Shown: positions 8,658-57,764 of the stretch, in pieces
How the letters are laid out: each line of letters begins with the position of its first letter
Position numbering within the stretch: position 1 is the first letter of the stretch
Origin: Saccostrea echinata
Lineage: Eukaryota
Direction: 5' to 3'
DNA length: 64,000 nt
NCBI RefSeq assembly: GCF_033153115.1
Contig: NW_026889774.1
Span: forward strand, 8,122,001 to 8,186,000
The notes under the pieces: generated by a model
Seen by the model: only the letters and a program-made list of their open reading frames with translations
Told to the model about the DNA's origin: nothing
Databases searched by the model: none
Program-made: the position numbers and the translations under genes

Positions 8658-8715
8658 AATGTTTAAAGTGGTTACATTGATCGGTGTAAAACCTAGATCC
8701 CAAAGGCATGGATCT

Positions 8716-9831
8716 TTATTGCCGAAATGGCCTTGAAAATCTTGATTGGGTCACATTGGGATTGATGTTTTGACGACCGACATTGTGAGTAGCCCCTTTT
8801 GATGTACTATGGCTGGTTTGATTACTGTAACAGTTGATGGAGGGATGGTTTTTGCCGCACTTAAGACAAGAGTGTGAAAATCTACAATCTTTTTTAAGAC
8901 ATGAACCCTTCAAGTTGAAATCATAACAACGCTTGTGCTGGTGCAAATTAGAAGTAGGCTTGCGTTCAGCGACTGCTGCCTGACCCATGTAAATCAACCA
9001 TAATTCTGCATCAATGTTTTCCCAACTGATCATACTATTTTTTGAGCGCCTAAGTCTAAACTGAATGTCATAATCCCTCCACCCTAGTGTAGTAGACCGA
9101 GAAGCCCCTAGCCTTATTGAACTGATATACTTTATTATGCCCTGAATGTGCTGTGGAAACTTTTTTAAGTAGATGGCAGCATAAATCAAAAAGGAATCAG
9201 TCCATTCCGAAATGTTTGCAATTTTTCTATCCTTAGATTTATTTTTTATTTTAATTTCTCCATCTTCAAACACAAGCAGTTGCTGAATTTCAGCAGCTGG
9301 ATCTAAATGCAATAACCTAGCAAGATCTATATACTCATTATTCCAAATTTTTTCCTGTGTTGTCAATGGTATATTAGCCCCAAGATCTGATGTAATACTG
9401 ACTAGGGGATTAACATGCATACCTGGCTGATACACAACATTTTTTGTTGCTGTAGTCATAGAGGTGTCTTGAAGCAGAGGCTGCACATCTGGAATATTTT
9501 GAGATGCGGCAACACTAAAGGTCTGTTGCAGCTGAGGCTGGTCACCTGTGATGTTCACTGGCGGTGTGGCATTCACGGGACTGACCTCGGATGTGTCTTG
9601 TAGGCCACAGGTAGGAGCATAAATCACTTGGCTACCACTTCCCGCATGCTGTATTTGTGAGGACTCTTGTGTTGGTTGCACCGGGCGCGCCGAGGGGCCG
9701 GAAGCACGTGCAGGGCGTCTGGCATAAGGCGATTTTGTCTTGGATCTCCTTGTAGATCCCACTCTCAACAATCCAGTGCTCATTTTCTTGCAAATAATGA
9801 ATAAAACCGTCAAAGATTTTCTTACTCCCAA
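8716..9831 (-). CDS. Gag-like ORF1 of the Ngaro element
   Basis: IWNNEYIDLARLL, WRDYDIQFR and a C-terminal Cys/His finger CYDFN..C....C.FSH.C..C...H....C, as seen in DIRS/Ngaro ORF1. Confidence 0.85.
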   Translation of the reverse strand: MGVRKSLTVLFIICKKMSTGLLRVGSTRRSKTKSPYARRPARASGPSARPVQPTQESSQIQHAGSGSQVIYAPTCGLQDTSEVSPVNATPPVNITGDQPQLQQTFSVAASQNIPDVQPLLQDTSMTTATKNVVYQPGMHVNPLVSITSDLGANIPLTTQEKIWNNEYIDLARLLHLDPAAEIQQLLVFEDGEIKIKNKSKDRKIANISEWTDSFLIYAAIYLKKFPQHIQGIIKYISSIRLGASRSTTLGWRDYDIQFRLRRSKNSMISWENIDAELWLIYMGQAAVAERKPTSNLHQHKRCYDFNLKGSCLKKDCRFSHSCLKCGKNHPSINCYSNQTSHSTSKGATHNVGRQNINPNVTQSRFSRPFRQ

Positions 9832-18676: not shown

Positions 18677-21600
18677 TTAATTTCGAAGGAAATCGTATGA
18701 GTGTCTGTATGTTTCATCAAGACAATCATCTGTCAAAGCAACGTCGAACTGAGTGCCCCCGAACTCAACTACGGCATGGATCAAAGAATCCTCGGACCAT
18801 CCTCCATTTGGTCGACGTAGTTTTATGGTGCCTATTTTAGTACAGTTTTTCTCGGTGGTATATGTGGGATTTTGTGAAGTTGACTGGTAAATTCCTATCC
18901 CCGTCACTGCATCTTCTTCACTCGGTGTGTACGTATTTTCGATTTTATGACCAATGGGAACCTCTTCTCCTTTCTGCACTAATGCTTCAAAAATATGCTG
19001 ACACATGGTTTTTCCGTCTGCTGGTCTTTTAATTTTGTAATCTTTTGGATGTAAGCCTTCAATGAAGGGCACATTAACTTCAAATCCAATAGAATAGCGA
19101 CTGATTCTTGAAGAAATGACGCTTGGCGTATGACCGAACAATACAGCCCCTTTTAAGACTGCTAGTCCTGGATCAGCTGGTGCTATAACCTTCTTGTCAG
19201 GGAATAATTCTTTTATTGCTTTTAAAACCATTGGCGATTCGGAAAACCCACCAACAAGGAGAATTTTTGACACAGAATCTTCAAACGAACTCATAATCTC
19301 TGTTATATGTTGAATTATTCCTTGCAGAGTATCTCGGAAAAAATCTTTGAAGATTTCTGGATGTACTCGTAGTTTTCCGGCCTTAAATATTACTTTCTTA
19401 GCGTATCTCGTCTGTGGAAGGGTCTCTGCCAAAGTTTCTCCTGTTTCTTCCTTAAATATCTCGAGCAGACGCAGTGGGAGTGTTATGGTCACCTTGTCTT
19501 CTAAGTCTGGTTTGACTGTACGTTTCTTAGTCTCAAAATCGCGGAAAAGTGAAATATAATCATCCATGTTATCATTCTTTAACGTTGTCAGAACATCATT
19601 TCCAAAGAGTTTGACCAAAAATTGGTAGAAGGCGTCATCCACTTTTGTTCCACCCCACGCTCCGCCGGTAGCATGGTGGACTTCGCGCAGGTTCTGGTTC
19701 CCCTGTACCTCATGAACTGTAATGTCGGCAGTTCCTCCTATACAAGTTTGAAATAAATGTATAAAACGATAAATCCGCTTCACTAAACAGTAATTCCGTA
19801 AAAGACATGCCCAGGATTAATTCAATGTACCGATAATAGTATATAATACTGCTATTACATTAATATAATTACAGTAGAATCAAAAATTAAATCGGTTCCA
19901 CTGTTTAGTCCTAACATATATTGACGTATTATTTAGACTTGTTTCTCACCTCCCAAATCAAGTACCATATACCGCGTCCCTGGTTTGAACTTGTACGATT
20001 CAGTCTTTCCTTTATTGACTGACATAACTCCTATAGGAACATGATTGCAGTAAATGGAGGCCGCTTCTGGCTCCAAGGCTAAAATCAACTGTTTCCTTTC
20101 AATACCAGCCTATAAATGAATAAAAGCAGTTAATTCACAATGCTCAAAGCCTTAAAAGCCATAGATAATGCAATGAGCTTGTGATATTATACACTTATTT
20201 CATGACTACGAGGGGGGCAGTCAAACTGTTGTCCCGAGGTAATAGGAAAGACCTGGGAAACGGTTGCCCGAGGTCGAAGGCCGAGGGCAACAGATTTCCA
20301 GGTCTTCCCCATTATCGAAGGACAACAGTTCGATTGTCATGAAATACGTGTTTTATTATCTAACCTACTATATAATTTCTTAAAGTAATGTTATAATAAT
20401 CAATGAATTTAAAAATACATTGACAAAAGTTTGTATTATTTCTTAAAACCAAAGTAAACAAGATGAATATTAATAAAATTCTCACAAAAATTGTTGTAAA
20501 ATTTGAAAAAATAATGGGGATGATCTTATCATGCACTAATAAATTGATGTATACATGTATTGTTTAGTAAGCAACATAACACTCTGAGTCAGAGATTTAT
20601 AGTGAGTGAAAGTGGCCTACATTTTTCCCAAATTACCCTCAGAAAAGGTGTTCTTGGCCTCTTCTTTAAAGTGATATTTTATTGATTATATATTTATATT
20701 GGACTGGGGATTACTTTTCAAATGATAATTTCAAACTGAATACCATGAAAATGTTTTAATTTATTCATAACTCAATATTATAGCTGTAAATACGGGAAAT
20801 TAATTATGACGTCATGATGGATCAGTTCAGCCATGCAACAGTTCATTCTGTGACCGGGTAAACTGTTTGACACTGTTTCATGATGTGCAAAAACATTAAA
20901 GTGAATCAGGAAACAGTTCAAAATGCCTAATTACAATTTATGTAGTAGGTTAGTTAATAACATATACATGTTCATGTACTGCATCAAAGTATGCTGCTGT
21001 TTCAAAATTTAAAATAGCTTTTGCTCAGTAAACAAACAAACAGATAAAGGTAATAACAATCTACTTTATTGGCAACACATCTCCCACCATGCACCAACTA
21101 TAAGAAAGTTTGGTTATTCTAGGCCTGTGTTCTACTGTACAAAATACATACATTAATTTTCTGAGCACAATATGTATATCCACAAAATAAGGTAACGGTG
21201 TCCTATCTTCAAACAATAACATAAACATATGTAGGTTTTTTATTATGCAAGATTTGATCTGAAGATGATATGATGAAATTAGGTTTACACATTAAATGCG
21301 TTTACTTTTGGGGGCCATAAACTTTCCACCTAACATAAACCAGATGACAGGTTTCAATGATTCTAGGTTCTACACTGTGCAAGATTTGGATGTAAAGCAA
21401 AAAATTATAAGTTGGGTTCACACGACCTATCTTGGGGTTGCAACACACCATTCCCCAAAAACGACAAAATGTAGTTAAGTTTAAGTGTTTATGATATAAC
21501 CTGGGCATGAAAAAGCAATCAGGCAAATGGAACGGAAATGTGATACATTGATACCGCACATTAAAAGAACGACCGGTGTATTAAACCGTACATATGACAT

Positions 21601-34822: not shown

Positions 34823-35253
34823 TCATTTTGTTTCATCGGACAACAGTTGACTTTTTAAGAAAGAAACCAATGTCTGGAATGATTGGTTATCTGACTCCTC
34901 CAAGTTCACATCCTTCCTCCCTCCATTAAGTTGCAACCGCAGGCAAGAATGTCCTAAAAAGTTAAAAGAAAATTAATTTAGCTTACCAACATTTTTGAAA
35001 GCACGAATTAGTCGAATGTACATTTGATACATGTCTATTTACCGTTTGCCTTTCATTATTATCATGATTTACAAACTGCTGAAAATCATTTAATCCTTCA
35101 TACCATCAACATGGAAAATATGGAACTCATCAATATCTGATAATCCTATTTGTTTGTCCAGCTCTGAACCCCATGTAAGATTTGGTGGGTGCTCGGATAA
35201 TTCCAAGAAAACTTGCTCTTTTTTCCCATCATTCTTGATAAATAAAATGTTTC
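34823..35253 (-). CDS. Two terminal PKS exons (35253-35104, 34953-34823) encoding a ~93-aa PH-like domain
   Basis: Polypyrimidine-AG acceptors and phase 1-1-1 continuity from the giant exon. Translation: GNILFIKNDGKKEQVFLELSEHPPNLTWGSELDKQIGLSDIDEFHIFHVDGHSCLRLQLNGGRKDVNLEESDNQSFQTLVSFLKSQLLSDETK*. Confidence 0.7.
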
Positions 35254-38200
35254 CTATCAAAAATAAAAACAAAATTCAGAACAGAATTTAGTTCAGATAA
35301 AATGTACGAATCGACAATACATACACAATGTACGTACCTACAAGTACATGTATATAAACCTCAAATTTTGATTAATATCAGAATTTTGATAGTTTCATAC
35401 TGACCTTTTGGAAACAAAGCTGGGCTTTTTTCCGACCATGTTGGAAGCTTTAGCTGGTGTAAAGTTTGGTAATATTTTTCTGGAAGTGTTTGGATGAAAT
35501 CCGACACAAAATTAACAACACTGGGAGTGTTAACGCTAGAAACAAATCCAGAGCAAAACTGAAACTCTAATTCTAATGTATTTTGTGCCAAATTGTGCTT
35601 TGCATAGAGACCAGTTTCATAATCCATATTTGTATTCACTTCCAGTGACTTTAGTTGTATGCACTGATTATTAACATTTTCCAACGAGTCAAAAAGGAAA
35701 TAATGCTTCATGTGGGTTTTCCGATCAAATTCCATAAGATCCTTGATTTCAACAAAAGGGAACAGACAATGATTCATACACTGATTGACAACGGCTTTAT
35801 TTTCCACTAGCATATCACAGACTCTAGCAAAAGAATCCTCAAAACTGGGGGATGCAAGGGGAATCAAATTAGCACATGGTAAAATCACATCTTGACATTC
35901 CGGAAGCTCTGAGCGCAAATCAATCTCTGTTAATAAAGAAACTCGTCCGGCATTAGTTAATTTGTTCAATACTATCTGAAAGGCACTGCATACAATGATA
36001 AACATGGATAAATCATGTTTTTTTGCAAATTCGATAAGAGCTTTCGGAATTTCGATTTCTTTTTTTGTATTTTCTAATTCAAAGCCATTTGTGTAAGATA
36101 TACAACTGTCTGATGTGCTGCACAATCTAAGATGGTTTTTCCAAAATGTTCTTGACTTTTCAGCAATTTCATGCAATTTGTTTGCATACACGTTTACAAT
36201 GTCAATGTGCGGTTTATCAAACCAAGGTGGGACGGGTTGTGATGCAAGAACATGCGATACAATCCTTTGTAGGTCATTCTGGATAATTTTTGCACAAAAG
36301 ACATCCAGTCCCACTCTGTTGCAATTTATGTGAAGTTGTGGTTTATTGTCTATATCTTCATATATCATAGATACTAAAACTTCAACATTCTGTAATAAAG
36401 AGCCAGATACACTTCTCGTTTTCACAAACTCGAATGGAAAAGTAAAGTCTTCACAATCCACTGTATTGTTTGAATCTTGCAAGCACAAGTAATTTTCAGT
36501 ACTTTGTACTCTTAAGTTAGGATTCATTCTAAAAAAAATTTGGAACACCTTTTCCCAAAAGTTTGGTTGATTTCGTGAGTTGGATATGGCATACGTCGCA
36601 ACAAATGACAATTCCTTATGAATGTCATGGACACTTTTTAGCTGCTTTTCTACGACTGACATTGTCTTAGATAAGGATTGATTCTCTCCCGATAAGTCAC
36701 TGGATTCTCTGCTCAACATTTCCTTTTCTCTCAAAAATTTGGCAATTTCTAATACCGATAATTCCCCTGACAATATCAGTACAATTGGAATTCTGACTTT
36801 TGTTTCGGAAAATATTATGTTTGTGATCTCGACTGCGTTCTGAGAATCCAATCCAAATCGAGTTAATGAATGCGTGTCAGCAATTTCTGAAATTTCAACC
36901 ATTAGAATTTGAGACGAAGTTTTTTTCACAAGATCTACAAAATTTTGAATCGATTCATAGCTGCTCTTTTCATCATCATTCTCCTCGAAAATCGATCTAT
37001 CAGCAAAAGATATTAGATTAGTAAACTTTGACTTTTCCCACCTTTTGCTACTAGCTGTGAGAAATTTTTTTAAGTCAAAATCAACAAAAATGCCTTGTGT
37101 ATGATCTGACAAAAGCATTTGTGTTAAAACACTGTATATTTGGCTAACAGACATCAAATTAATTCCTTTGTGAAGAAAGAAATCCTTTAAACTAGGATCA
37201 GATCCCAAACCAACGTCTAATGCACCCCAATTTATCACCTGCGCTGGAAGTCCTAAAGATCTGCGGTAGTGAGAAAAGCTGTCGAGGAATGCATTTGCTG
37301 CAGCATAATTGGATTGTGAGTGGCTTCCGAATGTGGATGCAACACTAGAGTGCAAAACAAAGAAATCAAGATTCATTTCTTTAGTGGCAAGATGAAGGTT
37401 CCAGGTTCCTTTTATTTTAACCATAAGAGGTATATCAAAAGTTTCAACCGTCATTTTTAAAACTGTTTGGTCTTTCAACTCTGCAGCTCCCTGAAACACT
37501 CCCCGAATAGGAATATTAGGCATTTGTTGTTGGATGGTGTACATCACTTGTTTAAGATGCTCCAGCTCATTTAAGTCGACTTCTCTATGCACCACACTAA
37601 CTCCATGGAGAAACTTTATGTTTTGAATACGTTTTTTATTTTCACTAGAGAGCGAACGTCTTGAAAGTGACACTATCATTTTGGCTCCTCTTCTACATAG
37701 ATACTTGACTATTAACCATCCCAACCCAGTCAACCCTCCAACTACGATATAAGCAGAGTCCGTTCGAATGAGAAATTCGTCTGGTATTCTTAACTCCATC
37801 TTATCTGAGAGTTTATCGATGTCTAAGAGGCTAGGAGTTGGACTGTCTATCTTTTTATTGCATCTTAGTGTTGTCAATAATCTCTCCCTTAGTGACGTAA
37901 CTTCCATACAATTTGAACGAAATAAATCAACAACATTAATAACATGAAAGTTGCATAAAGTTTGATCTATGAAAGAACTTGGCATTGCGCCTTTTAAGGA
38001 AATGCATGTTCGTACACTTGGAAAAAGAACACGGAACATGTGAGGATCATCATAACCCTCTTCAGACAACACAACTAACTGAACTGCTTTAATATTTTGA
38101 GTTTTCTTGGAGTATGCAGTCTCGCAACTTGATATAACACATTTCTTTTCCAATAGAGCAGAAAACAGAAAATGATAAATCAAGGAATATTTTTCACTAA

Positions 38201-41200
38201 AATCAATAAACACATCTGATTTGTGTTTCACTAAATCTGCAATGGCTATTGCAATTATAGCTGCGTGCAAGCTGCCTAGACTATATCCAGTTAGTTCTGA
38301 TTTTTGGAAAACGCATCTTTTGTCCACCCTGATTTCCGATCTTAATTCCATCTGCCCAAATGCTATAACTTCTAGTTCTCTGCCATCAACTTCTGCTGTA
38401 CCAACAACTTCACAAACTGTTATTCCAAAACCTTTGATTTTGTTTTCCGAACAGTAACGCTCAGGAGTTAAATTATCCTGAATAAAAAAAGTATCATGTA
38501 TGCACGGAAGAGCTTGCTTTGGTTTGATGCAACAAAACTCAAGATCGACAGAATCTTCATCACAAGGTATTGCGAAATAAGATAGCTCAGATTTATCGCC
38601 GTGATATCTAAAGCACACCTTGTCCGTCTCCTTTGGGAAAGTTGATTTATACACCGTTGAATGAAATTCATCAGACATCCTCTTTAATTCATTCTTGTAA
38701 ATGATGTTTTGGCGTACAGCATAGTCAGAAGGAGCAAAAGTATTTCCAGGATCCATTTCTGTTATAATTCTGATGATGTAGTCCATTGATTGCTCAGTTA
38801 GATCCTCTATATCCAGTAGAGTAAAAGAAAGCTGTGTTCCCTCCTGCGATACAGACCGAACCATTCCCCATAATTCAGCACCGATAATCCCTGTTTTGAT
38901 AGATTGACAAGCCTGTGTTTTATTTGTTATGACTAGAATGTGTACCTTGTTGTTGTAAAGTATCTTTACAAGTTCGAGAAAACAATGGGCTGTTTGTTTT
39001 ACTGAGTTCATTAGTTCATCTCCCGTTGTTTGTGTTTTTATTTCAGGTAATCCCGGAATATATATTATATCAAATTGCTGCGTGTCAACTTCCTCTTCAA
39101 GGAAAACAGACAATTGATGTTCAAAGTTGTCTGACAAAGCAAGGCAACGAACCTCTGAAGTCCTAAATCTTTTTGAAAAGGCATTTTCCAGAAGTGAAAG
39201 ATATTCTTTGTTCCAAGAAAGTAAATAAAGTTTTTTTCTGTCCAAATCTCTTAACTGAGGCAAAGTTATAGCATTCCAAGTTTCGCTGTAGGAGAGAGAA
39301 AAAATGTCGCTTTCCAAAGCAACTTTGGTGACTTCATAATTTGATATTTTGGCAATAATGCTTCCATTTGTATGCAAAAGTAGAATGTTGAAGGTTGCAG
39401 TTACTGAATTTTCGTAGACAAGAACTGTATAGCATATCATACGTGCGCATGGTTTTTGCTTTACAGTCAGACGGGACACACGACTAGGAAGAGTTCTTGC
39501 CTTCACTTTGTCTTTCTTTTGAAAGTGAATCCCACAGCAAGACTGAAACATGCTGTCTATAATGATAGGATGAAAGAAAGCCCTATTTAAATTTGTCATT
39601 ACTTCATCAGACAGATTTATTTCACTGATGCATTCAACTCCGCGACAAACACACTTCTTTATCGTTTGGTACAATGCGCCATGATGAAATCCCAGACTTC
39701 GCAATGTTGGGTAAACATTGGTTGTTTCTTTTTCGTTATGTAATAAAGAAATGAGCCTTTCTATGTTCAGTGTGGTAATTCCTGAAGTAGTGGACTGCTT
39801 TATCGTACCAGAGGATAATACTGACTGGCTTTCTGATGAAATTGCTTCGAAATAAATAGTCTTCTCTTTTTCAAGTGCTTTTACTACAATGTTTTGTTCT
39901 GTATCTTTGACTAAGAGTGTTCTATGGATATCCCAGGAAATGTCCATTTCCGTCACTCCTCTGCTTTGCAAAAGCATTGTTCCTATTTCTAAAGCAACGT
40001 CCCCGTACATTGCAGCCGGTACAACTATGTTCCCATCTAAAGTATGGTCATAGATAAATGGCGTATTCTTTCGACTTAAAGTGATCGTAAATTGCTCATT
40101 ATTTCCAATTCTAGTTCTGGTAAGCAATGTGCTTTCGTCCTCTGTATCTCCATTTAGTATGCTTTTGATTTTTTCTGACTTTACGAGATACTTCCGTTTA
40201 CTGAATTGGTATTTTGGACACGAAAGAAATTTCTGCATTGGAACAATCTTTTCCCATGAAACTGGGATTCCTTTTCCAAAGAGGTTGATGAAAGTTTCTC
40301 GAAAAACATCGATCTCTTTATCTCGTTTCATTGAAGGCAGAGCTTCTTCTACGGAATCGGGAAATATGCTTGATAGGTGAGCTCTTAGAACCGGACTCGG
40401 GCCAATTTCAAGAAAAATTGAATTAGGGGCTCTTCGTTTTGCTTCCTCTAAAGCGTGTTGAAATCGCACGGGTTTAAATACATTGTCAGCCCAATAAGAA
40501 TTTGATCCAAAATTTTCATCAGCTATTTGGCCAGTGACCGTTGAAATAACGGTTGTCCTTGGAATTTTTTTCTCGATGCCTGATAGAATTTGCTCCAACC
40601 TTTTACTTGCATTTTTTGTCAAATGACTATGATATGCACATTTTACATTCAAATGAGTTATTTTTGCTGATTTATCAGCAAGTTTAAGTTTTAATTCTTC
40701 AATAGCCTCTTTGTCACCCGAGACTGCACAGGAAACACTGCTGTGATAAACTGCAACATTAGCTTTTCCGGCCACAAGATTCTCGCAAGTTTCCTCAATT
40801 ACTTCAACAGGGCAATGTTGAATAAGAACCATTTTCCCGAAGGTTTCACTTGCCAAATTAAGGGACCGAAAATAAATCACTCTAACAGCGTTTTTCAGGG
40901 TAAGATTTCCACTTGCATACGCACCTGCAACTTCCCCAACAGATTGGCCAATTATAGCAGTTGGATTGACACCCAAATGTTCCCACATCGCTGTTAGACC
41001 AACTTGACAAGCAAAGATTGACAGATGATTTTTCAGAGGATCTGAAATATCTTCTTCTGTTTCAAAAATCGTACGAACAGAAATGTCTGTGAAAGAACTC
41101 AGATGCTTATCAATTTCTATAATGGTTTTTTCAAAGACTTTATCTTGAGTGATGAGCTGTTTACACATTTTTACCCAGGTTGTACCAACACCACAATACA

Positions 41201-44200
41201 CAAATATTATTTTAGGTCTTTCTTTGAGAGCTCCTGGTATGGGTAACTTTTTATGCACAAATTCGTCGATTTCTGAAATTAATTTTGAAGTGTTTTCAAC
41301 AACAAACACTTTTCGAAATCTATAGTGACTCCTGAAATGAACTGTTGTGCTTGAAAGATCAATAAGCGAGATTGTATCCATATCATCAAGAAGAAACTCA
41401 AGTAAATGCTTGGCTGTATCATATAATGCACTCAAATCCTTGGCTGATAAGAGAACATAAAATGCCATATTAAGGCAGCTTTCCATATACTGTAATTGAA
41501 CAGAAGAGCTACCAGTTTCCTCATAATTTCTCACAATAGCGTGTGAGTTAGTTCCACCAAAGCCAAAACAGTTTATTGAAGCTATCCTCTTCCCCTCAGA
41601 ATTTGCTGGCCACTTCTGAAGACTGCGACTAACTTTCATTTTACAAGCACTAAAAGGAATTTTGGGATTTAATGTTTCAGCATGAAGGGAAGGAACAAAA
41701 TGCCCGTATTTCATCATCAGAAGTACTTTGATTAAAGAAGCCATTCCGGCACCTGCCTCTAAATGACCAATATTGGTTTTTACCGAACCTATCGGTATTT
41801 CTTCTTCACAATATTTTGAAAAGAAAGATCCTAGAGAGCTTACTTCAATGTAATCGCCAACTGGTGTCCCTGTCCCTGAAATATTACACCTCATTAATTT
41901 ATACAAACATTATTATGAGTATAAAGGATAATATGATTGATTGATTATTACTGTTTAACGCCGAGTCGGCAATATTTCAGCCATATTTTGGCGATAAAAA
42001 GGATAATAAAATATATATAGAAAATGCACTAATTTAACACCTTCTTGCAACTTAACGTATTTGCATACTGATAAAATAGAACATTTGTAGCCTTTTGAGA
42101 TTTTAAAGACTTCCCTCTTTATTTTTGTAATTGAGAACCTAAACTTCTTGAACCCCTCTTTCCCCTTGAGCCATAATTTGACCAAACTTCCACACTAATA
42201 AATAAAGATTATTCATTTTGATGCTACAACTAATATAGTAGAATTTCTTAATGATCCGAATTTTCTTACAGGTCTGTCGTGGCTTCAGTGGTTTTGGGTT
42301 TCTGACTCAGTGGTTGAACAATTTATGAATGATCCCATTTTTATGTTTATATTGTTATACCTATAAAATTATTTCCTTTATAAATCTATACTAAACAAGA
42401 GGCCATGGGCCATATCGCTCATCTGAGCACATTGGCTAGGAAAAAGCAGAAATCAGTTCAGTATTGAAAAGTTTATGAGGGTAACTTAAATTTACACTAC
42501 CTCAAGATGCTTCCACATCAATATTACTAATCAAGGCTTTGTTGTTCTTGAGCATAAGAATTTTAAAGATTTTTTTCCTTATGTATTCCTATGTAAAAAT
42601 CTGATAGCTCATTGTGGCCCTAGCCTAACTTTATACTACCTGAGGATGTTTCTAAAATAAAATGACTAATCATGGCTTTGCTGTTCTTGAGCAGAAGATT
42701 TTTTCAAGACAATTCCTACACATTCTTATGTAAAACTTCTAACCCTCTGTTATACCCCCCACCCCTCCATCCTTGGAGGGTCATAATTTGAACAAACTTG
42801 ATTCTACAATACCTAAGTTTGCTTCTGTATAAATATGACTAATAATGGGTTAGTTAATCTTGAGAAGATTCAAGAAGATTTTTAAATATTAATATATTTC
42901 CTATGTAACATGTATGATCAGGTTCTTATAAGGGATATATAGGTTTTCTTTTTACTCTGTCTGAGATAATGATTGGAATGATCATTAAGACCACTCTGTC
43001 TGAGGGTACATCACACAGTCCTTAGATTTTTCTCTTATTTGCAGATGGGGACTGGGTAAGGTACTACTTGCACCGTGTTTCTCCCCTAGGTTTAAATTTC
43101 CTTCAGGTTTACTACACCCAAAACTTAACATCAATTCCCTAGTGTACTTGCCTCTGGTATTTATAACTTTTATACTTTTATTTTGTCTAACCAATAACTT
43201 CTTTATTGCTGAATCAACGTCCAACTTCTTCAGCTAGCTTCTGAATGCCTGACTATCCCAAAACTTTGCCTTATATACCCTTTGACTAGTCCATTCCTAG
43301 GGTTGTCAGGTCATTTCACTATTTGAAGTCTTCCATGCGTTTTACGCAAATGCCTCTTAACCATTACGTCTATATATTCCTATGTAAAACTTTGACCCAC
43401 TGTTGTGGCCCCACCTTACCCCGGGGGACATGATTTGAATAAACTTGAATCTACAGTACCTGAGGATACTTCTATATAAATATGATTAATAATGGCTTGG
43501 CTGTTCTTCAGAAGAAAATTTTTAAAGATATTCCTATGTAAACCTTTGGGCCCCTGTTGTTTCTGCACCAAACCTCCAGGGGTCATGATCTGAACAAACT
43601 TGAATGTACACTACCTGAGGATACTTAAATATTAATCTGACTAATGGCTTAGCTGTTCTTCAGATCTTTAAAGATATTTCTTATATATTCCTTTGGTAAA
43701 CTTTGACCGCCTTTTGTGGCCCTGCCCTACCCCAGGGGTCATGATTGGAACAAACTTGAATCTACACTACCTGAGGATACTTCTATAATAATATGACTAA
43801 TCATGGCTTTGCTGTTCTCGAGAAAAAAAATAAAGACATTTCCTACATATTCCTATGTATAACTTCGACCCCCTCTTGTGGCCCCGCCATACCCGCGGGG
43901 TTATGATATGAACAAACTTGAATCTAGAGTATTTAATGAAGCTTTCACATAAGTTTCATCTTTTCTTGCCCAGTGGTTCTTGAGAAGAAGATTTTTCAAA
44001 GATGCCACCAAATTTTCACGAATTCTTTATTATCTCCCATTGAAAGAGGGCATGGTACTTCCTGTGAACAAACTTAAATCCCCTTTACCCAAGGATGCTT
44101 TGTGGCAAGTTTGGTTGAAACTGGCCCAGTGGTTCTTGAAAATGTCGAAAATGTGAAAAGGTTACAGACGAAACACGACAGACGGACGCAAGACACTCTT

Positions 44201-47200
44201 TGATCATCTAATATTTTCGTTGTTTTACTTAGCGGTTCAAAAAATAATTCAAAGTTGACCACTGATTGAAATATTGGTTCTGTTGATGATATTGGAATTC
44301 AATGACGTTTTTTAATGCCACAATATAGGCGGAATCAGATATTTCTTACTTTATTCGACATTTACGAAATTCTCTGAGTTAAATCCGCAGTGCGAGTAAA
44401 CAAAATTTATATCAAATATCAAAAACACATGACAGCCAGCGCCAGGTGTGGCAAAATAAAAAGTAAAAGGTATAACAGAACATTTATTGACTGTGTTCCC
44501 GGGTAAAATGCGTTTTGCTGAACCCTCGAACCAAACTGTTTGCCTTCGCTCTAACGGCTTCAAGCAAACAGTTTGGCTCTTAAGAACAACAAAGGCATGT
44601 TGCCCTCGAACCCAATCAATAAATGTATAATCTTACACTCCCCCTCCTCCTGGAAAGTTTATTGACCTTCATTTAAAATCATTATATGAATAGGCTTTTC
44701 CTAACTAAAGCATATGAAAAGGTAGATTCAATATACATATGAGCTTGTGGAGAGGCCAAGTTCCTGTTATGTAAAATTTTATATGACGAATGCCGAAGAT
44801 GACAATGTTAGAGTCAATATATTAAGTATTTAGACTTATTATTAATGTTAATGTGCTATTCTCCCCTTACCATGTGCTTCTATATATTGTACGGAGGACG
44901 GTGAAGTCTTGCTTTCCTTGAAAATTTTTTCCAACAAATGTTCTTGCTGTTTACCAGAAGGGGATGTGATTGGCGTACTCATATGACCATCCTGGTTAAG
45001 CATTGTATGGATTGTCCCCCATATTTTGTTTTTGTCGTGGATTGCCTGAATAGAAAAAAACAACAACTCAGAATACATGTTTATGTAAAACCGTCTAGCA
45101 TTTCATAAAACAAGATACTGTCATAAGACAGTAATACCCGCGCGGAAGTGTTTGCTTATAAAGGTACTCTCCCTTGTACCTGGGCAATGAATAGCCACAG
45201 TAGTTACTAACTAATCAAAATAAAATATATACACATGTATCAGATTGAGCAAAAATTGCACATATGAGCATCTGACCCATGAGTTTCTTGTCAGAATTTC
45301 AAAAAATAAGGTCATTTTCGGTCTGAAATTGAAGATTTTAATGAAGTAAATTCTGTGTAGGATCTCGAATCAAGTTTTAAGAGCCATTCTCTGTAATGAC
45401 TTTAACTTTTATATAGGAGGTGTGGCACTTATAGTCTCAGAATTTCTCTCAACTCTGTCTGGTAAAAGTCTTTGATTCCCGAAACTCAAGTCAGGCAAAA
45501 ATTGGTTGCTATGTCCATGGTTATCATGGCAACATGCACTGAAGTTTGGAAAATGGCATCTTCGAACATGTTTAGAGTCCTATGGCCATAGTTAACGTTC
45601 GTAGCGATGCAAACAAATGACACTGTTTCAAAAAGTTGAAGGCATAATGTTTAAATTCATGGTAAACATAACTCTTGTACTATATACCAAAGAAATGTTA
45701 TGTTTCTTATTGGTTGGTAAGAGCTGCCATGGTTTTAATACCACAAAAGGATTTCAAATTTACTCTCTATATGTTTTTATCTGACCCTATCTCTCTAGAA
45801 ACACATTTCTATATAACTGGTAATCAATTTTTAAAGGCATTTATGTGGTTCTAATTTTCACATTTCAAAAGATTCAAGTTAAATTCTTCAAATAAAGTGT
45901 TGCTTTGGAAATTATAGGAAAAATATGTATATAAAGCTGAAAAAAGAGGTTTTTTTTCTTGGATACGTAGCCTTGTATGTAGATTTCGAAAACTTTTATG
46001 ATTAATATTTATGAACAACTTACCTGAATTTCAATTTTTACTACCCCATAATCTCTAACATAATCTGATGCTACCATAAAGGGTTTAATACATGTATTGC
46101 TATATAGTTAACAAAATCGAACATTTCCCTTATTGGTAACCATAGCAACAATGTTATTTCTTCATCAAACTATCAATATATGTTATTCAACTTTAGTTCT
46201 ATCTGATAAGTACAATTCAAGGTGAGTCAAATAACATGTTTCTTGATTTAAAGGTACCTAAATTCTTTAAGCAGCAAAATATTATCCCTAAAACCACTGG
46301 TACCTTGTTTCCATGGTTACACAACACAGTATCAATTAATCCCAATTTATCTCAAGCTATCTGTGTTACAAGGTCCCAACGATGTATATTTGCCAGTCTT
46401 GAATTTCCATGTTTTTCCTCAAGATAGCAGCATAAAAAATCTCAGCAACAGATTTTGTATGGCTACACTGTGTTACCATGGCAACCATAAAAGTTATTTT
46501 AAGAATAATATTGCCAATAGCTTATTACTTGAAATCATTTTTTTCTTGTGTTGTTGATTTAGTTTGATCATTTTACGCCTATTATCAGTGAATATTGAGC
46601 GTTTTTCAGCATATAAAATATATTACAAATGTACCCATGGTTACCACTTACTTAGAGATATATTTATAAATAGTTTCTTTATAGCACAAGTGCCAACAAG
46701 TTGTTATGTTTGGTTCTCTTAGTATACAGTTAAAGTATATCTTTGAGGGAGTTAGCAAGATTCCAGTTCCCCAAGGCCAGGACTATTTCCTGAGGCGAAG
46801 CCGAGGGAAATAGTCCTGTCGAGGGGAACTGGAATCTTGTTAACTCCCTCAAAGATATACTTTTAACTGTTTTATTATACCGATACAAACGTAAAATTTA
46901 GAGGATTCAGATGGCGTGATTTCAAAGCAGGGATTAGCTCATTGAACTAACTCACGGGGATTAGTCAATTCACGTATCACATGGCCGTAGGAACCGGGGT
47001 GGGAGGAGGAGGGGCGGGGGGGGTTTCCCCCCGCCCCCCCCCCCCCAATAATTTTGCCGATATATTGATCAATATAGTAAACATAGATACCATATGCTTG
47101 TGCTCCCTCAATAAAATCAATAAAAACGTCTGTTGACTTTTTTGGTTTTTGCTTGTCAAGGAATTTCTGGTAGTGCCCTAGCTGCAATAATGTAGCCCTC

Positions 47201-53200: not shown

Positions 53201-55134
53201 GACCCAGGGGCCATGAATTTCACAGTTTTGGAAGAGACACTCTTGCTCATCATAACCATGTGCTTAGCATGTTTGCCAAATACTCAGAGGGAAAGAGGAA
53301 GATTTTCAAAGTAATAATGCATTTTCACTATATAATCAATAGAAAGAACCCCTGATCCAGGGGTCATGATAATCACATTTTGGAAGAGGCACCATCATAA
53401 CCATGTACTTTGTTTACGTTTAATATACAGGGGGAGAGAAGCATTTTAAAGAATTTCTGCAATTTCACTATGTGATCGATAGAGCCCCAATCTAACTCCA
53501 GAATCCCTTACCCTGGGGCCACAAATTTCACAATTTAGGTAAAGGATTCACTGTATGTTATAATCATGCCAACAGTTTTTAATTAGTGTTTGATATCCAG
53601 GAGTAGAGAAGAAGATTTTTGAAAATTGCATTAATTTTTATGATTTTGGTCACAACCCTATGGCCCGAGGAGAGGAGGGTAGGAACCATGGAAATCACAT
53701 TTTTGCCCCCTTTTTCCATGGATACTCTATACAAAAATTTGTTGAAATTGGTTCAGCTGTTGATGAGAAGAATCTGAAAATGTTCAAAAGTTTACGAACG
53801 ACGGACGTCGCACGACGACGGACGAAAATGATTTGCAATAAGTCACATGAGTGACCTAAATAGGAGTTTGAGGAAGACGAAAGTGTGATAGACGGACGGA
53901 CAACGAACGGACGAATATAGAATAACAACAATATACCCAAACTTTCTTTAGAATGTGCAGATATAATTATAATCTCATGAAAACTTGAACTTACATCTGC
54001 AAGTCTTTTCAACACAACAACGCCACATCCTTCTCCACGGGCATATCCATCTGCTTTGCTCGAGAAGGTATGACATTTTCCTGTTGGCGACGCCATTCGT
54101 GCGCAAGATAGGTTGATGAAAGTATCTGGATCTAGGATGACATTGACTCCACCGCAGATAGCAGTTGATATTTTACCTGTTTGATGTTGTAGAATGAAAT
54201 CATGTTTTGTTTTTTAAATTAACTAAATTGAATGTTTCTGATTGTTTGGGTTAATTTTATTTCTGGAAGTTTTCAATTAATAAACTGGGCAGATTTTCTG
54301 TTGATGTTTATTTATTTATCTCTCAAAGCCTCTTTTATTCCATCCATATCAAAATCATTTATAATTTTATTCTTTAAAAGCCGAGGTACATGTAAAGTTT
54401 GCGTACATATATATTAACAATTTTCGAAAATCCCAAACTCTTTTCGATATGTTTTTATATGAAACACTGCATTCCGTCAGACTTCCAATTCAGCTGTAAA
54501 GAATGATTCGTGGAACATTTTCATAGCATTAAATTTGAAATCATGTGAAAAGTTTTTTTTTCCCCTGTACTCCTGAGTTATTTAAAATTTTAGCTGCAAC
54601 CTAATCTGAGGGTCCATATTATTTTTCTTAAAAGGGGTTCCTACCACTTATGAATGTTTGCATATTAATATGATTTAGTATACGAACCTTCTACTCTTGA
54701 AAAGAATTGTTTTTATATATTCCATTGTAAAACGTCACAGTCCCACCCTACCCCAGGGACTATATGACATAATCTAACTTGAATCTACACCACATTGGGA
54801 TTCTTGCACATTATTATGACTAATTAGGGTCTTGCTTTTCTTGGAGAAAAAAGATGTTTTCCTATATATTCCCATATAAACTGTGATCCCCTATAGAAGC
54901 CCTCTCCTACCCCCGGGGCCATGACGGATAAATTGAATCTATACTACCTGAGGATGTTTGCATAAAAAATATAATCATCATGCCCTTACCGTTCTTGAGA
55001 TTTTTTTTTTTTTTTTAAAAGATTTTCTACTAGAGTAAATATCCAATATTGTATTTCGTTTCTCTATATTGAGGCCCCACCCTAACTCCGGGGGCCATGG
55101 TTTGAACAAACTTTTATTTATGCAACTTTCTGAT

Positions 55135-55166
<32 letters not shown>

Positions 55167-55987
55167 GATTAATATGATGAATCCTGGCCTTGTTCTTGAA
55201 ATAAAGATGTCGAAACATTTTTCCCCGATATATTTTCATGTAAAACTGATCCCTCGTTGTGGCCCCACCATATCCCCTGAGGTCAGGATTGAACCAATTA
55301 AATCTTAAAGATGTTTTCATATAAATACCGCAAACGTCAAAGGATAGAAAAAGTTATTTAGGCTCAAGCAACTAAAGTCAGCAAACCTTCAAATCAGTAC
55401 CCGTCAATCTTCGAAATGACGTGCATTGTTTAGTATTTCAGAAGCCAGAATTGTTGTAATGTTGTTGAATGAGGGAATAAAATACACCCTTAGGATTAAG
55501 AGAGTAAAAAAAAATAGCATCATGAAGAGAATGTCCTCTGTAGCAGAAGAGACCAGGGGCAAGGGATCGATTATCGGATTCTAATCAGGTAATGTGCAAA
55601 TTAGTACATAATTCAATTTTTTAAACATGCAATCATTTATATGCATAAAAAAAAGATTTTTTTCTATTAGAATGTAAACCATGAGGTTAAATCAAATGTT
55701 TCATGAAAAAAAAATTATATTCAAACCCTAATTTGTAGCCTTAACTTTATTTAAATAGGTATTATTATCATAACTGAACTCACCATTTTTCAATGCCTGC
55801 GATGCTGTATCAATGGCAACCATTGACGAAGAACATGCTGTGTTTATCGTCATGGCAGGTCCTAAAAGGTTGTAGAAGTAAGCAACTCTTGCAGATAGAA
55901 TACTGTTGTCAACACTTGTAACTGTGGTATTCCTGCTCCTTTCATGCGATATCCGTAATAAACTGCCCCAATCACGATTTAGAGCTC
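34823..55987 (-). CDS. Type I polyketide synthase (KS-AT-DH-degenerate ER-KR-ACP-condensation-like-PH-like), 5'-incomplete; exons 55987-55784, 54176-53995, 45045-44871, 41875-35405, 35253-35104, 34953-34823
   Basis: All junctions are GT-AG with matching phases, and the 7313 nt splice into one open frame (~2436 aa visible). KS triad TACSSS / EAHGTGT / KTNIGHLE; AT GQSVG, AYHS; DH HTLDGNIVVP, DSMFQ; KR GGLTGLG, YAAAN; ACP GLDS. Confidence 0.93.
35405..41875 (-). CDS. PKS giant exon (6471 nt): KS C-terminus, AT, DH, degenerate ER, KR, ACP, condensation-like domain
   Basis: Uninterrupted ORF; acceptor ttcAG before GGACAGGG (HG|TGT) and donor AAAG|GTCAGT. Confidence 0.93.
42394..44205 (+). mobile_element. 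HINE/pearl-like element carrying ~166-bp satellite units, in a PKS intron
   Basis: 5' AACAAGAGGCCATGGGCCATATCGCTCA, repeated gggtcatgatttgaacaaacttgaatctacactacctgaggat units, and a 3' acag/acgg microsatellite. Confidence 0.8.
44871..45045 (-). CDS. PKS KS exon (AIHDKNKIWG...NQDG...YIEAHG)
   Basis: KS motifs NQDG, ITSPS and EAHG; AG/GT boundaries. Confidence 0.9.
46726..46870 (+). repeat. ~145-bp hairpin with apex CCTGAGGCGAAGCCGAGG
   Basis: Arm ACAGTTAAAGTATATCTTTGAGGGAGTTAGCAAGATTCCAGTTCCCC and its mirror image. Confidence 0.85.
46980..48049. mobile_element. Non-autonomous DNA transposon with CA termini and a 5-bp TSD, hosting an AcademH-like insertion
   Basis: CATGGCCGTAGGA / TCCTACGGGCCTG; TATCA on both flanks. 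Confidence 0.6.
47179..47978. mobile_element. 800-bp non-autonomous DNA transposon with TAG termini and a 9-bp TSD (AcademH-like)
   Basis: TIRs TAGCTGCAATAATGTAGCCCTCTCCGATTTTTTT / AAAAAAATCGGAGAGGGCTACATTACTGCAGCTA; GTAGTGCCC duplicated at 47170-78 and 47979-87. A lone end of the same family is at ~10523. Confidence 0.75.
48677..48916 (+). mobile_element. Truncated copy of the tRNA-derived SINE
   Basis: Similarity to 25803-26100. Confidence 0.8.
50296..50595 (+). mobile_element. tRNA-derived SINE, full-length copy
   Basis: Boxes A/B, the same core and an (AAAC)n tail. Confidence 0.85.
50870..51680 (+). mobile_element. 3' fragment of a Penelope-like retroelement (RT C-terminus/thumb plus 3' UTR)
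   Basis: IYPGELEIKDTTES, SYFDILL, TKLYDKRNDFNFSIVNFP, SNIP..PAYGVYISQLIRYARA. The ORF ends without a downstream GIY-YIG domain, as in the permuted Naiad/Chlamys-type PLEs. Confidence 0.75.
52330..53860 (+). mobile_element. HINE-like element with a ~160-bp tandem array (same family as 1748-4090, opposite orientation)
   Basis: Units cagaacccctgacccaggggccatgaatttcacaattttggaagag; 3' acg/acgg microsatellite and the end sequence gtcacatgagtgacctaa. Confidence 0.75.
53995..54176 (-). CDS. PKS KS exon (AICGGVN...ADGYARGEGCGVVVLKRLAD)
   Basis: KS motifs; AG/GT boundaries. Confidence 0.92.
55784..55987 (-). CDS. PKS KS exon with the catalytic Cys (GPAMTINTACSSS)
   Basis: KS active-site motif; AG/GT boundaries. 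Confidence 0.92.
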
Positions 55988-57764
55988 CTGCAATGTTTAT
56001 CAAACATTCCACGACTTTAAAAAAATGTCAATTTCAGATAGATTCAAGGTCACAAAATGAATTATTTAAAGCACTAAAAATGTTTTTTTCCACACTATTA
56101 CGAGAAGCCTATTGACCACATCGCTCAGCTGTGTAACACCAGCCCAATACTCTTCTTCATAAGAAGATTTTTAAGATTTTTACACTGAATTTCCATTCCC
56201 CTATTGTGGATCCAACCAAGCCCTATGATATGGAGGGTAATCGTGTTCAAAAATCCAGACGTGTACATTCACAATTGCAATTTGTAAGCTTGAAAATCGC
56301 ATATCTGATTAATTTCTAATTTGTTGATCTCAGACTCTCATCTCGAACACTGCACCGTGTAATAATTGACGTTACTTATTTATACTTTACAGCTGAAACT
56401 TGAAACTACCATATTTTGAGTAAGTTATTGTAAAAATTCAAACATTAATGAATCCGTATTTGATATGTTCCCGTACCTGAGTCTGAATTTTACACATCTA
56501 TGCTGATGTTAATATATACGCGGATCTAGAATTCCCCCTGGAATTTGCAGAGTTATTAAATGTATATACTAAACGAACTAAAAGTGACCTTGGACCCCCC
56601 CCCCCCCCTTTCGAAAACGCGGATCTGTGTAAAATTGGTTCGAAAAGTCATAGGTATGTAGCTTTAGAATTCAACGACTACCTAACCCCCCCCCCCCCCC
56701 CCCGAAATAGTTTTTTTCACGTTTGGGAAAGGAGTTAACTTTTTTTGGCTTGTCAAGAATTTTTCTAGGTTTGATTTATTTAGAGAGGAAATGTAATGAA
56801 TTGTCCCCTTAAAGCCGTTTTAACAATAGCAATCCTGAAAATATCAGCAAGAATCAACATGAGATCGATTCGTATCAAATTAGTGCTGCAACATACATCT
56901 GATAAATGACCACCGATATTTTGAAATTAATTATCAAATTATTTTCACGCCATTTAAGACACAACTGAATGCTATACTGATCTTGAAAACAATTACAGAA
57001 TACAATGAGCTTACTGTTTGTACATGCATCACGAACGTAAATATATATGGGTCAGACTAATCTCAGTAAACGGACAAAAAATGTCATCCAATCATTTTTT
57101 TTTAATTTCTATTTAACATAGGTAAGAAAAATATATTTGTCATTTGTTTTATTTAATCTTATTAATCATAAATATTTAAGAAAACAATTATATTTTTACA
57201 AAAATAAGTCTGCCAAACTTTTTTTTTTTGGTAATAAATCTAAAGAATGTTGAATCATATCGTTTGCTGCATACTGATTTTCTTTAGATAGATTTGAAAA
57301 AGAATTTAATTACGAATTCATATTGACTAATAATTTTTTTAATGTTTTAAAATAGAAGGGAAGTAAAAGTTGTTAATCATAGGTGTATCAAGCATCCCTT
57401 AATTTTTAAAAAACCTAGATTTATTTCTTGTTCATTATGTTCAATAGATATTAAATATCCATTTCCTACCCAACACATTTTAAGACTTTACAAGGGATAC
57501 ACTAACTTCCGGTTAGGCTTATAGTGTATGATAAAACCAGAGACTTTCGAGTAAAAGTTCTCAGGCTGTCTTCAACCTCGCGGCCTTAGGCTTGGCATGA
57601 GGTCCGACAAAACGCATGTTGCACTCGAACCCATAAATGTACATGAATAATTATTATTACTGTGCTTCATATTTATTTGGGGGAGGGGGATTCAAAAGTA
57701 TCTGAACGATAGATTTAAAAAATATACTTTAACTATTATAATAATGAAAAACTTAATATGTATA

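What the first reader, a model, noticed from the sequence alone, without database searches (positions are those of the whole stretch)
35440..36660. Animal type I PKS with no thioesterase that continues into an NRPS-type condensation-like domain
Seen: after the ACP (GLDS, ~36843-36854) there is no GxSxG thioesterase motif. About 400 aa follow with the condensation-domain landmarks in order: MSVVEK (C1-like), RMNPNLR (RHExLRT-like), NRVGLDV at the HHxxxDG position, SRTFWKNHL (YW..L), FAKKHDLSMFIIVCSAFQIVLNKLTN, DLRSELPECQDVILPCANLIPL (GR...E...IG.FVN.LPL) and HCLFPFVEI (HQ..PF..LV). Known: animal FAS ends in a TE, and fungal LovB has a non-canonical terminal C domain. Inference: this is a spliced, host-encoded PKS-C hybrid in a probable bivalve. 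It may off-load its chain onto an amine or alcohol acceptor, or the C domain may be a non-catalytic scaffold because both histidines are replaced and only the structural Asp remains. No adenylation domain is present. I cannot check how well this architecture is already described.
Basis: partly seen in the sequence, partly recalled or inferred. Interest (0 to 1): 0.88.

Follow-up and report, generated by a model that had tools for sequence, protein, structure and literature searches.

The report
Oyster polyketide synthase ending in condensation-like domain
An oyster gene for a polyketide-making enzyme ends in a well-folded NRPS-type condensation domain instead of a thioesterase; this layout is already published for molluscs, but this copy has lost the usual catalytic histidine.

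Summary
One uninterrupted minus-strand exon (about 41880 to 35405) encodes KS(C-terminal part)-AT-DH-KR-ACP followed by about 420 aa. That tail hits Pfam Condensation above the curated cut-off when cut out. It folds with high confidence (pLDDT 88) and matches solved NRPS C domains over its full length (Foldseek E 1.7e-22, TM 0.74). There is no thioesterase or adenylation domain. The gene is spliced and host-encoded, and a 99% identical protein is Saccostrea echinata LOC133192336.

It is not a new architecture. Lin et al. 2024 (PMC10764717) already describe mollusc PKSs with terminal C domains and N-terminally concentrated introns. I found relatives in bivalves, gastropods and a chiton, and five more copies in this genome.

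What seems new is a detail. In this copy's sub-clade the HHxxxDG position reads NRVGLDV, so the catalytic His is Arg. The clade nests among relatives that keep [NS]HxxxD. The same His-to-Arg change marks fungal LovB-type CON domains and glycopeptide X domains, apparently by convergence.

The domain is under purifying selection in two paralogs of the same sub-clade (dN/dS about 0.3). It most likely handles or releases the ACP-bound chain without canonical His-dependent amide formation. That mechanism is inferred, not shown.

The scan's two other notes, on this same window, concern other parts of the same gene.

The parts
35405..41880 (-). Large exon of the PKS gene encoding KS C-terminal half, AT, DH, a non-catalytic spacer, KR, ACP and the C-like domain. 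The ORF as listed runs 35361-41906.
   Evidence: ORF list. Pfam domains. tblastn of the RefSeq model P0001 places aa 311-2474 at 41876-35385 with 99.8% identity. The donor G|GT is at 35405/35404. The 5' end is approximate.
36732..36923 (-). ACP (PP-binding) domain. The phosphopantetheine serine lies in GLDS, with the Ser codon at 36843-36845.
   Evidence: PF00550 at aa 1662-1725 of the ORF. Motif coordinates.
35475..36692 (-). Condensation-fold (C-like) terminal domain, both lobes.
   Evidence: Structured elements of the AF2 model span residues 5-410 of window:35406-36704:-. Foldseek gives LgrA C domain at E 1.7e-22. The Pfam PF00668 stretch corresponds to about 35571-36308.
36300..36320 (-). 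Active-site motif position, NRVGLDV in place of HHxxxDG. The second His is Arg and the Asp is kept.
   Evidence: Alignments with canonical NRPS C domains and family members. Ungapped HMM alignment of the family profile to SrfA-C.
35856..35921 (-). C5-like motif DLRSELPECQDVILPCANLIPL. It carries the near-invariant Arg (R264 of the domain) and the N..P pair (N279, P282).
   Evidence: Invariant and near-invariant columns in A1 and A2. Aligned to GR...FxNxxP of SrfA-C.
35104..35253 (-). Penultimate coding exon, start of a 92-aa C-terminal tail after the C-like domain.
   Evidence: Read from the sequence, with acceptor ag at 35255-35254 and donor gt at 35103-35102. Matches the P0001 tail.
34823..34953 (-). 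Last coding exon with stop codon TGA at 34825-34823.
   Evidence: Read from the sequence. Matches the P0001 C-terminus.
44863..45045 (-). KS exon (P0001 aa 253-313).
   Evidence: tblastn; ORF translation.
53995..54183 (-). KS exon (P0001 aa 190-252).
   Evidence: tblastn. Pfam ketoacyl-synt hit on the ORF at 53698-54096.
55773..55988 (-). KS exon (P0001 aa 124-195). Exons for aa 1-123 were not found in the window.
   Evidence: tblastn.

Best explanation
The last 1.3 kb of the large exon encodes a genuine, selectively maintained condensation-fold domain. It is fused directly after the ACP of a host-encoded, iterative, partially reducing type I PKS (KS-AT-DH-KR-ACP-C', no TE, no A or second carrier domain). 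The gene belongs to the published mollusc 'PKS with C domain' class. In the wider family the active-site position reads HxxxxD or [NS]HxxxD. In this oyster sub-clade the catalytic second His has become Arg (NRVGLD), a derived state. The structural Asp, its partner Arg and the C4-C6 landmarks are retained. The most likely mechanism is inferred by analogy with LovB-type CON domains, which carry the same His-to-Arg change and are essential for product formation. On that view the finished ACP-bound polyketide enters the donor side of the channel. The domain then governs its folding, cyclisation or release without canonical His-dependent amide formation. With no A/T module, any nucleophile would have to be intramolecular, water or a free small molecule. 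Identity and fold are shown. The evolutionary polarity rests on a FastTree. The chemistry is inferred.
For: Fold and family: Pfam PF00668 above cut-off on the cut piece. AF2 pLDDT 88.4 and Foldseek full-length matches to NRPS C domains, to MokA CON (6ad3) and to HtmB2-CT. The family profile hits SrfA-C at E 6.7e-18. The Atlas returns only Condensation clusters.

Architecture and host origin: one 2181-aa ORF holds ACP and the C' domain. Introns are GT-AG and lie mainly in the KS part, plus two short ones after the C' domain. A 99% identical RefSeq protein comes from Saccostrea echinata. No TE or AMP-binding domain is found.

Family: named relatives come from Pecten, Argopecten, Mytilus, Mercenaria, Mactra, Mya, Saccostrea cucullata, Patella, Haliotis, Bradybaena and the chiton Liolophura. 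This genome holds six copies. Lin et al. 2024 describe the class and its intron pattern.

Derived His loss: in the FastTree the no-His clade (support 1.0) is sister (0.97) to Saccostrea copies with NHxxxD. It sits inside a clade with Pecten, Argopecten and Mytilus, which also have [NS]HxxxD. Arg is present in 6 of 7 clade members.

Constraint: dN/dS is 0.30 between the two no-His paralogs. Invariant residues within the clade are densest around the active-site motif and the C6 region. D134, W188, R264, N279, P282, P316 and E363 are nearly invariant across 44 sequences.

Precedent: in LovB/MokA CON and the X domain the second His is Arg (PMC6260248). In ClaE the C domain is essential, the Arg is dispensable and the Asp is required (PMC13492342).
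Against: The Figure 5B sheet of Lin et al. lists no canonical PKS for the genus Saccostrea.

The C' domain evolves as fast as the DH and spacer regions. Identity to P0005 is 30-34%, against 63-65% for AT and KR, so constraint is moderate.

By sequence the family profile is far closer to bacterial NRPS C domains than to LovB/MokA CON (E 6.7e-18 against 5e-4). The LovB analogy is therefore convergent and may not carry over. Unlike HRxxxDG, the first His and the Gly are also gone here.

The two closest paralogs have the large exon split over two reading frames and may be pseudogenes. One of them has Gly instead of Arg.

I could not inspect the model's channel, because no coordinates were available to me.
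Confidence: 0.5

Rival explanations
1. The domain is still a true acyltransferase. It releases the polyketide by ester or amide bond formation with a free small-molecule alcohol or amine, as a 'truncated PKS-NRPS' with only a C domain would. Substrate positioning, or the Arg, would replace the His.
For: The domain is terminal, directly after the ACP, with no other release domain. The whole fold and the Asp-Arg pair are kept. Sister paralogs and many relatives keep a minimal HxxxD, consistent with an ancestral transferase role. Fungal PKS-C enzymes that make N-acyl amides are cited in PMC13492342 (Hai and Tang 2018, title only).
Against: Both histidines are absent. PMC13492342 states that in canonical C domains mutation of the second His abolishes activity. 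The long stem branch (0.88) of the no-His clade suggests a functional shift. No candidate acceptor is known.
Confidence: 0.25
2. The domain is a non-catalytic scaffold or docking platform, like the glycopeptide X domain. It would recruit a trans-acting enzyme or, together with the 92-aa tail, localise the synthase. Release would occur spontaneously, for example as a pyrone, or by a separate hydrolase.
For: The X domain shares the His-to-Arg change (PMC6260248) and appears among the fold hits (4tx2, 4tx3). AFPKs that end in an ACP off-load without a TE, possibly through spontaneous pyrone formation (PMC10764717). A further tail follows the domain. The Mytilus relative has a weak PH_21 hit in its tail (E 0.0017).
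Against: Conservation within the clade peaks at the active-site motif rather than on an obvious surface patch. No partner has been identified. This reading cannot be separated from the best explanation with the present tools.
Confidence: 0.15
3. The domain is a decaying relic of a former PKS-NRPS hybrid, or the gene is not expressed, so it has no present function.
For: The catalytic motif is lost. The domain is the fastest-evolving part together with DH and the spacer. The two closest paralogs have frame breaks. No canonical PKS is listed for Saccostrea in the Figure 5B sheet of Lin et al..
Against: A 6.5-kb frame stays open through the domain. dN/dS is 0.30 in the clade. The AF2 model is confident. 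The no-His clade has several diverged members at 32-42% identity that all keep the domain. The terminal C' domain is kept across Bivalvia, Gastropoda and Polyplacophora.
Confidence: 0.08

Closest known systems
Mollusc 'canonical PKS' clade with terminal condensation domain (Lin, Li, Krug and Schmidt 2024, Nat Commun 15:236, PMC10764717)
   Same: The order KS-AT-DH-KR-ACP-C is the same, with few introns concentrated at the N-terminus. The KS/AT is closer to PKSs than to animal FAS or AFPK. The taxa are the same: bivalves, gastropods and chitons. antiSMASH calls their domains Condensation_LCL, matching my profile's best PDB hits.
   Different: That paper gives no biochemistry and, in the passages I searched, no active-site analysis. 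The present sub-clade lacks both His residues and is missed by Pfam on the full-length protein. Such copies could be counted there as 'without C domain'. Saccostrea has no canonical PKS entry in their Figure 5B sheet.
LovB / MokA / ClaE C-terminal CON domain of fungal highly reducing iterative PKSs (HRxxxDG)
   Same: It is a terminal C-fold domain after the ACP of an iterative PKS without an A domain. The second His is replaced by Arg and the Asp is retained. MokA CON (6ad3) is a full-length fold match at TMq 0.71.
   Different: It is not close kin by sequence: profile E 5e-4 against 6.7e-18 for SrfA-C. The oyster clade descends from NHxxxD-type mollusc domains, so the change is convergent. 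The first His and the Gly are also lost here. No trans-ER partner and no decalin product are known.
Fungal truncated PKS-NRPS (PKS-C only) and fungal terminal CT domains
   Same: A C-fold domain serves as the last domain and the only candidate release device. The [NS]HxxxD motif of the sister mollusc paralogs resembles the CT variant, in which the first His is Ser (PMC6260248).
   Different: Those enzymes keep the catalytic second His. The present copy does not.
Glycopeptide NRPS X domain
   Same: It has a C-like fold with the second His replaced by Arg and a non-condensing role (PMC6260248). It is a fold hit at TMq 0.65-0.66.
   Different: The X domain sits in a bacterial NRPS before a TE and recruits P450s. 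No such partners are known here.
Deuterostome PKS-NRPS hybrids (amphioxus, acorn worm KS-AT-DH-KR-ACP-C-AMP; Hojo et al. 2015, PMC4604110)
   Same: These are animal-encoded PKSs that continue from the ACP into a C domain.
   Different: Most of them continue into an adenylation (AMP-binding) domain. The oyster gene has none. Kinship was not tested.

Membership tests
NRPS condensation-domain superfamily (Pfam PF00668, CAT-like fold) | Significant match to the family profile | tested here: met
   33.7 bits against a cut-off of 30.6, E 2.2e-8, on the 479-aa piece. The match is not listed when the full-length protein is scanned. The family profile hits SrfA-C at E 6.7e-18.
NRPS condensation-domain superfamily (Pfam PF00668, CAT-like fold) | Condensation-domain fold (two CAT-like lobes) | tested here: met
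   AF2 pLDDT 88.4 and pTM 0.88. Foldseek aligns about 440 columns to LgrA, SrfA-C, Txo and TomB C domains at E 1e-22 to 1e-19 and TMq 0.64-0.74. The match is over the whole length; the lobes were not inspected one by one.
NRPS condensation-domain superfamily (Pfam PF00668, CAT-like fold) | HHxxxDG catalytic motif with the second His | tested here: not met
   The position reads NRVGLDV, and only the Asp is kept.
NRPS condensation-domain superfamily (Pfam PF00668, CAT-like fold) | Structural Asp-Arg pair and the C4-C6 landmarks | tested here: met
   D134, W188, R264, N279 and P282 are invariant or nearly so. They align to the W of YW, the GR and the N..P of SrfA-C. The salt bridge itself was not measured.
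Mollusc PKS with terminal C domain (Lin et al. 2024) | KS-AT-DH-KR-ACP-C order with few introns, concentrated at the N-terminus | tested here: met
   Pfam order. One 6.5-kb exon runs from mid-KS to the C' domain, with at least three short KS exons upstream and two short terminal exons.
Mollusc PKS with terminal C domain (Lin et al. 2024) | KS/AT of PKS type rather than FAS or AFPK type | tested here: inconclusive
   PDB ranking puts CurL, DEBS, Dictyostelium Pks16, MAS and LovB above EcPKS1/2 and animal FAS. No KS tree against their reference set was built.
Mollusc PKS with terminal C domain (Lin et al. 2024) | Orthologs and paralogs with the same terminal domain in other molluscs | tested here: met
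   Named hits come from 12 mollusc species in three classes. Per-domain collinear alignment was done with eight of them.
LovB-like CON domain | HRxxxDG motif | tested here: not met
   Only the Arg and the Asp coincide. The first His is Asn and the Gly is Val.
LovB-like CON domain | Sequence kinship with fungal CON domains | tested here: not met
   MokA CON scores E 5e-4 over about 100 residues, against E 6.7e-18 for SrfA-C. The clade nests within mollusc NHxxxD domains.
LovB-like CON domain | Domain essential for product formation and able to act in trans | not testable with these tools
   This needs expression of full-length and truncated constructs.
Complete PKS-NRPS hybrid | Adenylation and thiolation domains after the C domain | tested here: not met
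   No AMP-binding hit and no second PP-binding hit in the 2560-aa model. Only a 92-aa tail follows.
Animal FAS / TE-terminated PKS | C-terminal thioesterase with GxSxG | tested here: not met
   No TE family hit and no GxSxG after the ACP.

The most novel reading that the evidence does not exclude
Oysters independently evolved a histidine-less, arginine-bearing condensation-fold domain at the end of an iterative PKS, a third origin of the LovB-CON / X-domain solution. It would perform a non-condensing job such as templating cyclisation, controlling release or recruiting a partner. Because routine full-length domain scans miss this sub-clade, part of the mollusc PKSs reported as 'without C domain' may carry such cryptic domains.
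Probability: 0.3. Interest if true: 0.6.

Novelty: new member of a known kind. Interest (0 to 1): 0.35.

Why it matters
No mollusc PKS of this class has a known product or a known off-loading mechanism, and Lin et al. say off-loading is unknown for most animal PKS-type enzymes. This genome holds sister paralogs that keep HxxxD (three copies on contig C16) alongside copies with Arg in place of the His. That gives a natural comparison for asking what a terminal C-fold domain does on an animal PKS. It may also bear on the unresolved role of LovB-type CON domains. For annotation, the practical point is that such domains are missed unless the C-terminal piece is scanned alone. The architecture itself is already in the literature, so this is a refinement and not a discovery.

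Tried and rejected
The unnamed closest relatives P0002-P0005 could not be placed taxonomically, and no transcript contigs were examined.
- The search for homologous proteins with the region option returned only the gene's own RefSeq model. The exhaustive HMMER search was needed to find relatives.
- NCBIfam gave nothing for the domain.
- phmmer of the single sequence against the PDB was only marginal (E 0.04). The profile and the fold search settled the question.
- treekit and a first MAFFT run timed out. In alignment A1 the first seven query residues were scattered far upstream, so the cut-outs held nearly whole proteins. I recut the domain and built a FastTree. The same misplacement of seven residues was in the alignment used for AF2 and affects only the disordered N-terminus.
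- phmmer and jackhmmer of the 92-aa tail against all fetched proteins found no relatives outside the gene's own model. tblastn finds it in the two closest paralogs.
- P0061, which has a canonical HHLVADG, turned out to be a KS-ACP-aminotransferase-C protein of bacterial type and was left out of the family.
- I considered WS/DGAT, PapA5 or BAHD-type acyltransferases as alternatives for the fold. None appears among the listed sequence or fold hits.
The joined protein used for mapping and Pfam is the public model P0001 as returned by the search tool.
- Nothing in the window was taken for human, and no N stretch was filled.
Full report
**What is there**

The region lies in a single minus-strand open frame of 2181 codons, 35361-41906. 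Pfam finds, in order:
- the C-terminal half of a ketosynthase and its linker;
- an acyltransferase (aa 234-539);
- both halves of a PKS dehydratase (602-863);
- a ketoreductase (1385-1563);
- a phosphopantetheine-binding domain (1662-1725) with the serine in GLDS.

No family is reported for the last 450 residues when the whole frame is scanned. When that piece is scanned alone, PF00668 Condensation scores 33.7 bits (E 2.2e-8), above the curated 30.6. No GxSxG follows the ACP, and no thioesterase or AMP-binding family is found.

**Gene model and host**

A 2560-aa protein, 99% identical, is in the public collection as 'uncharacterized protein LOC133192336 [Saccostrea echinata]' on a 29-Mb contig. 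Mapping it back gives KS exons at 55988-55773, 54183-53995 and 45045-44863. The large exon follows at about 41876-35405, then two short terminal exons at 35253-35104 and 34953-34823. I read GT-AG boundaries directly at the two 3' introns. The first 123 residues were not found in the window. The KS/AT part is closer to CurL, DEBS, Dictyostelium Pks16, MAS and LovB than to animal FAS or the sacoglossan AFPKs. This is therefore a spliced, host-encoded bivalve gene of the 'animal PKS' type.

**Fold**

I modelled the 433 residues from 36704 to 35406 with a 44-row alignment. The AlphaFold2 model has mean pLDDT 88.4 and pTM 0.88. Foldseek against the PDB returns condensation-fold domains throughout the listed top hits. 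The best is LgrA (E 1.7e-22, TMq 0.74, about 440 aligned columns). SrfA-C, Txo1/2 and TomB follow, along with HtmB2-CT, the teicoplanin X domain and the MokA (LovB orthologue) CON domain. A profile of twelve family members hits SrfA-C at E 6.7e-18 and MokA CON only at 5e-4. ESM-Atlas feature search gives only Condensation clusters.

**Family**

An exhaustive HMMER search of 1.84 billion representatives gave 100 hits at E<=0.001. Four unnamed sequences are 32-36% identical over the whole domain, and they carry KR and, in three of the four, PP-binding hits upstream. About forty further hits are proteins of 2200-2700 aa with the domain at their C-terminus. Every named one is a mollusc:
- bivalves: Pecten maximus (named 'PKS-NRPS hybrid himA-like'), Argopecten, Mytilus, Mercenaria, Mactra, Mya, Saccostrea cucullata and S. 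echinata;
- gastropods: Patella, Haliotis and Bradybaena;
- the chiton Liolophura.

The window's genome holds six copies. Besides this one there are two at 42% identity (contigs C25 and C46) and three at 25-28% within 440 kb of contig C16.

**Active site**

At the HHxxxDG position the family falls into three groups:
- most members have HxxxxD, with only the first His;
- a second group has [NS]HxxxD, with only the second His, which is the minimal catalytic motif. It includes Pecten, Argopecten, Mytilus, Patella and the three C16 copies;
- the query's clade has neither His, reading [NSR][RG]xxxD, here NRVGLD, with Arg at the second-His position in six of seven members.

I built a FastTree of the domain rooted on three NRPS C domains. 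The no-His clade (support 1.0, stem length 0.88) is sister (0.97) to the Saccostrea NHxxxD copies. It sits inside the clade that holds the pectinid and mytilid sequences. The loss is therefore derived.

The Asp is nearly invariant over 44 sequences, as are W188, R264, N279, P282, P316 and E363. In the HMM alignment to SrfA-C these align with the W of YW, the GR and the N..P.

**Constraint**

Against P0005 the domain is 30-34% identical. That is like the DH (35%) and the spacer (35%), and lower than AT (63%) and KR (65%). dN/dS over the domain is 0.30 between the two no-His paralogs. It is 0.15-0.20 among the HxxxD paralogs. Within the no-His clade, 51 of 418 positions are invariant, densest around the motif and the C6 region. 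This indicates purifying selection that is somewhat relaxed, not decay. In the two closest paralogs the large exon is split over two frames. I could not tell short introns from frameshifts.

**What is already known**

Lin et al. [quoted passage not shown] They also state that the few introns of mollusc PKS genes are concentrated at the N-terminus. Their antiSMASH files call the domains Condensation_LCL. Their Figure 5B sheet lists the canonical PKS clade for Crassostrea, Ostrea and Magallana but not for Saccostrea. Hojo et al. 2015 (PMC4604110) tabulate amphioxus and acorn-worm PKSs with ACP-C-AMP, and one with ACP-TE-C. The architecture is therefore published, and this is one more member.

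I did not find the active-site state discussed in the passages I searched. Four of four close members of the no-His clade show no PF00668 hit on full-length scanning. Neither does the query. Such copies may have been counted as C-less.

**Mechanism**

In LovB/MokA CON and in the glycopeptide X domain the second His is also Arg, and the acceptor entrance is closed in CON, X and CT domains (PMC6260248). In the LovB-like ClaE the C domain is essential and works in trans. Its Arg is dispensable and its Asp is required (PMC13492342). The oyster domain shares the Arg and the Asp but is not close kin of CON, so the parallel is convergent.

My best reading, at 0.5, is a His-independent domain that receives the ACP-bound chain and governs its cyclisation or release. 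The rivals are:
- a still-active transferase to a free amine or alcohol (0.25);
- a pure scaffold or recruitment platform (0.15);
- a relic (0.08).

None could be tested here.

**Verdict**

Novelty is low because the class is published. The derived Arg-for-His sub-clade and its invisibility to routine scans are a modest new detail.

Noticed in passing
window 34823-35253: Two short terminal exons add a 92-aa tail after the C-like domain. The tail is found by tblastn in the two closest paralogs but by no profile search in other relatives. The Mytilus relative P0021 has a weak PH_21 hit (E 0.0017) in its own tail.
   Followed up: partly
window 285-1487 (+): An open frame has CN_hydrolase and Vanin_C domains and so looks like a pantetheinase. 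It lies about 33 kb from the 3' end of a gene whose product needs phosphopantetheine. This is probably coincidence.
   Followed up: no
window 5469-6077 (-): A GDSL lipase/acylhydrolase-like open frame lies downstream of the PKS. It could be a stand-alone hydrolase, but no link has been shown.
   Followed up: no
window 6220-9831 (-): A retroelement with a tyrosine recombinase (Phage_integrase) frame next to a reverse-transcriptase frame, a DIRS-like arrangement.
   Followed up: no
window 18680-19783 (-): An HSP70-like open frame of 368 aa that covers only part of the HSP70 profile.
   Followed up: no
G000 C16:17.66-18.10 Mb (L004, L005, L006): Three PKS paralogs with open frames of 2203-2221 aa lie within 440 kb. 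Their terminal domains keep NHxxxD. Two are 95% identical over that domain.
   Followed up: partly
L009 (G000 C25:4207000-4216999) and L010 (G000 C46:6518800-6528799): These are the closest paralogs (42% in the C-like domain). The C25 copy has the same five N-terminal KS exons (L007/L009). In both copies the large exon is split into two overlapping frames. The breaks correspond to about aa 1846-1878 of P0001 in L009 and about aa 1605-1659 in L010. Whether they are short introns or frameshifts is unresolved. The C25 copy has Gly where the others have Arg.
   Followed up: partly
window 37250-40060: About 500 aa between the DH and the KR give no methyltransferase or enoyl-reductase Pfam hit. This agrees with the other first-stage note of an eroded ER.
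   Followed up: partly
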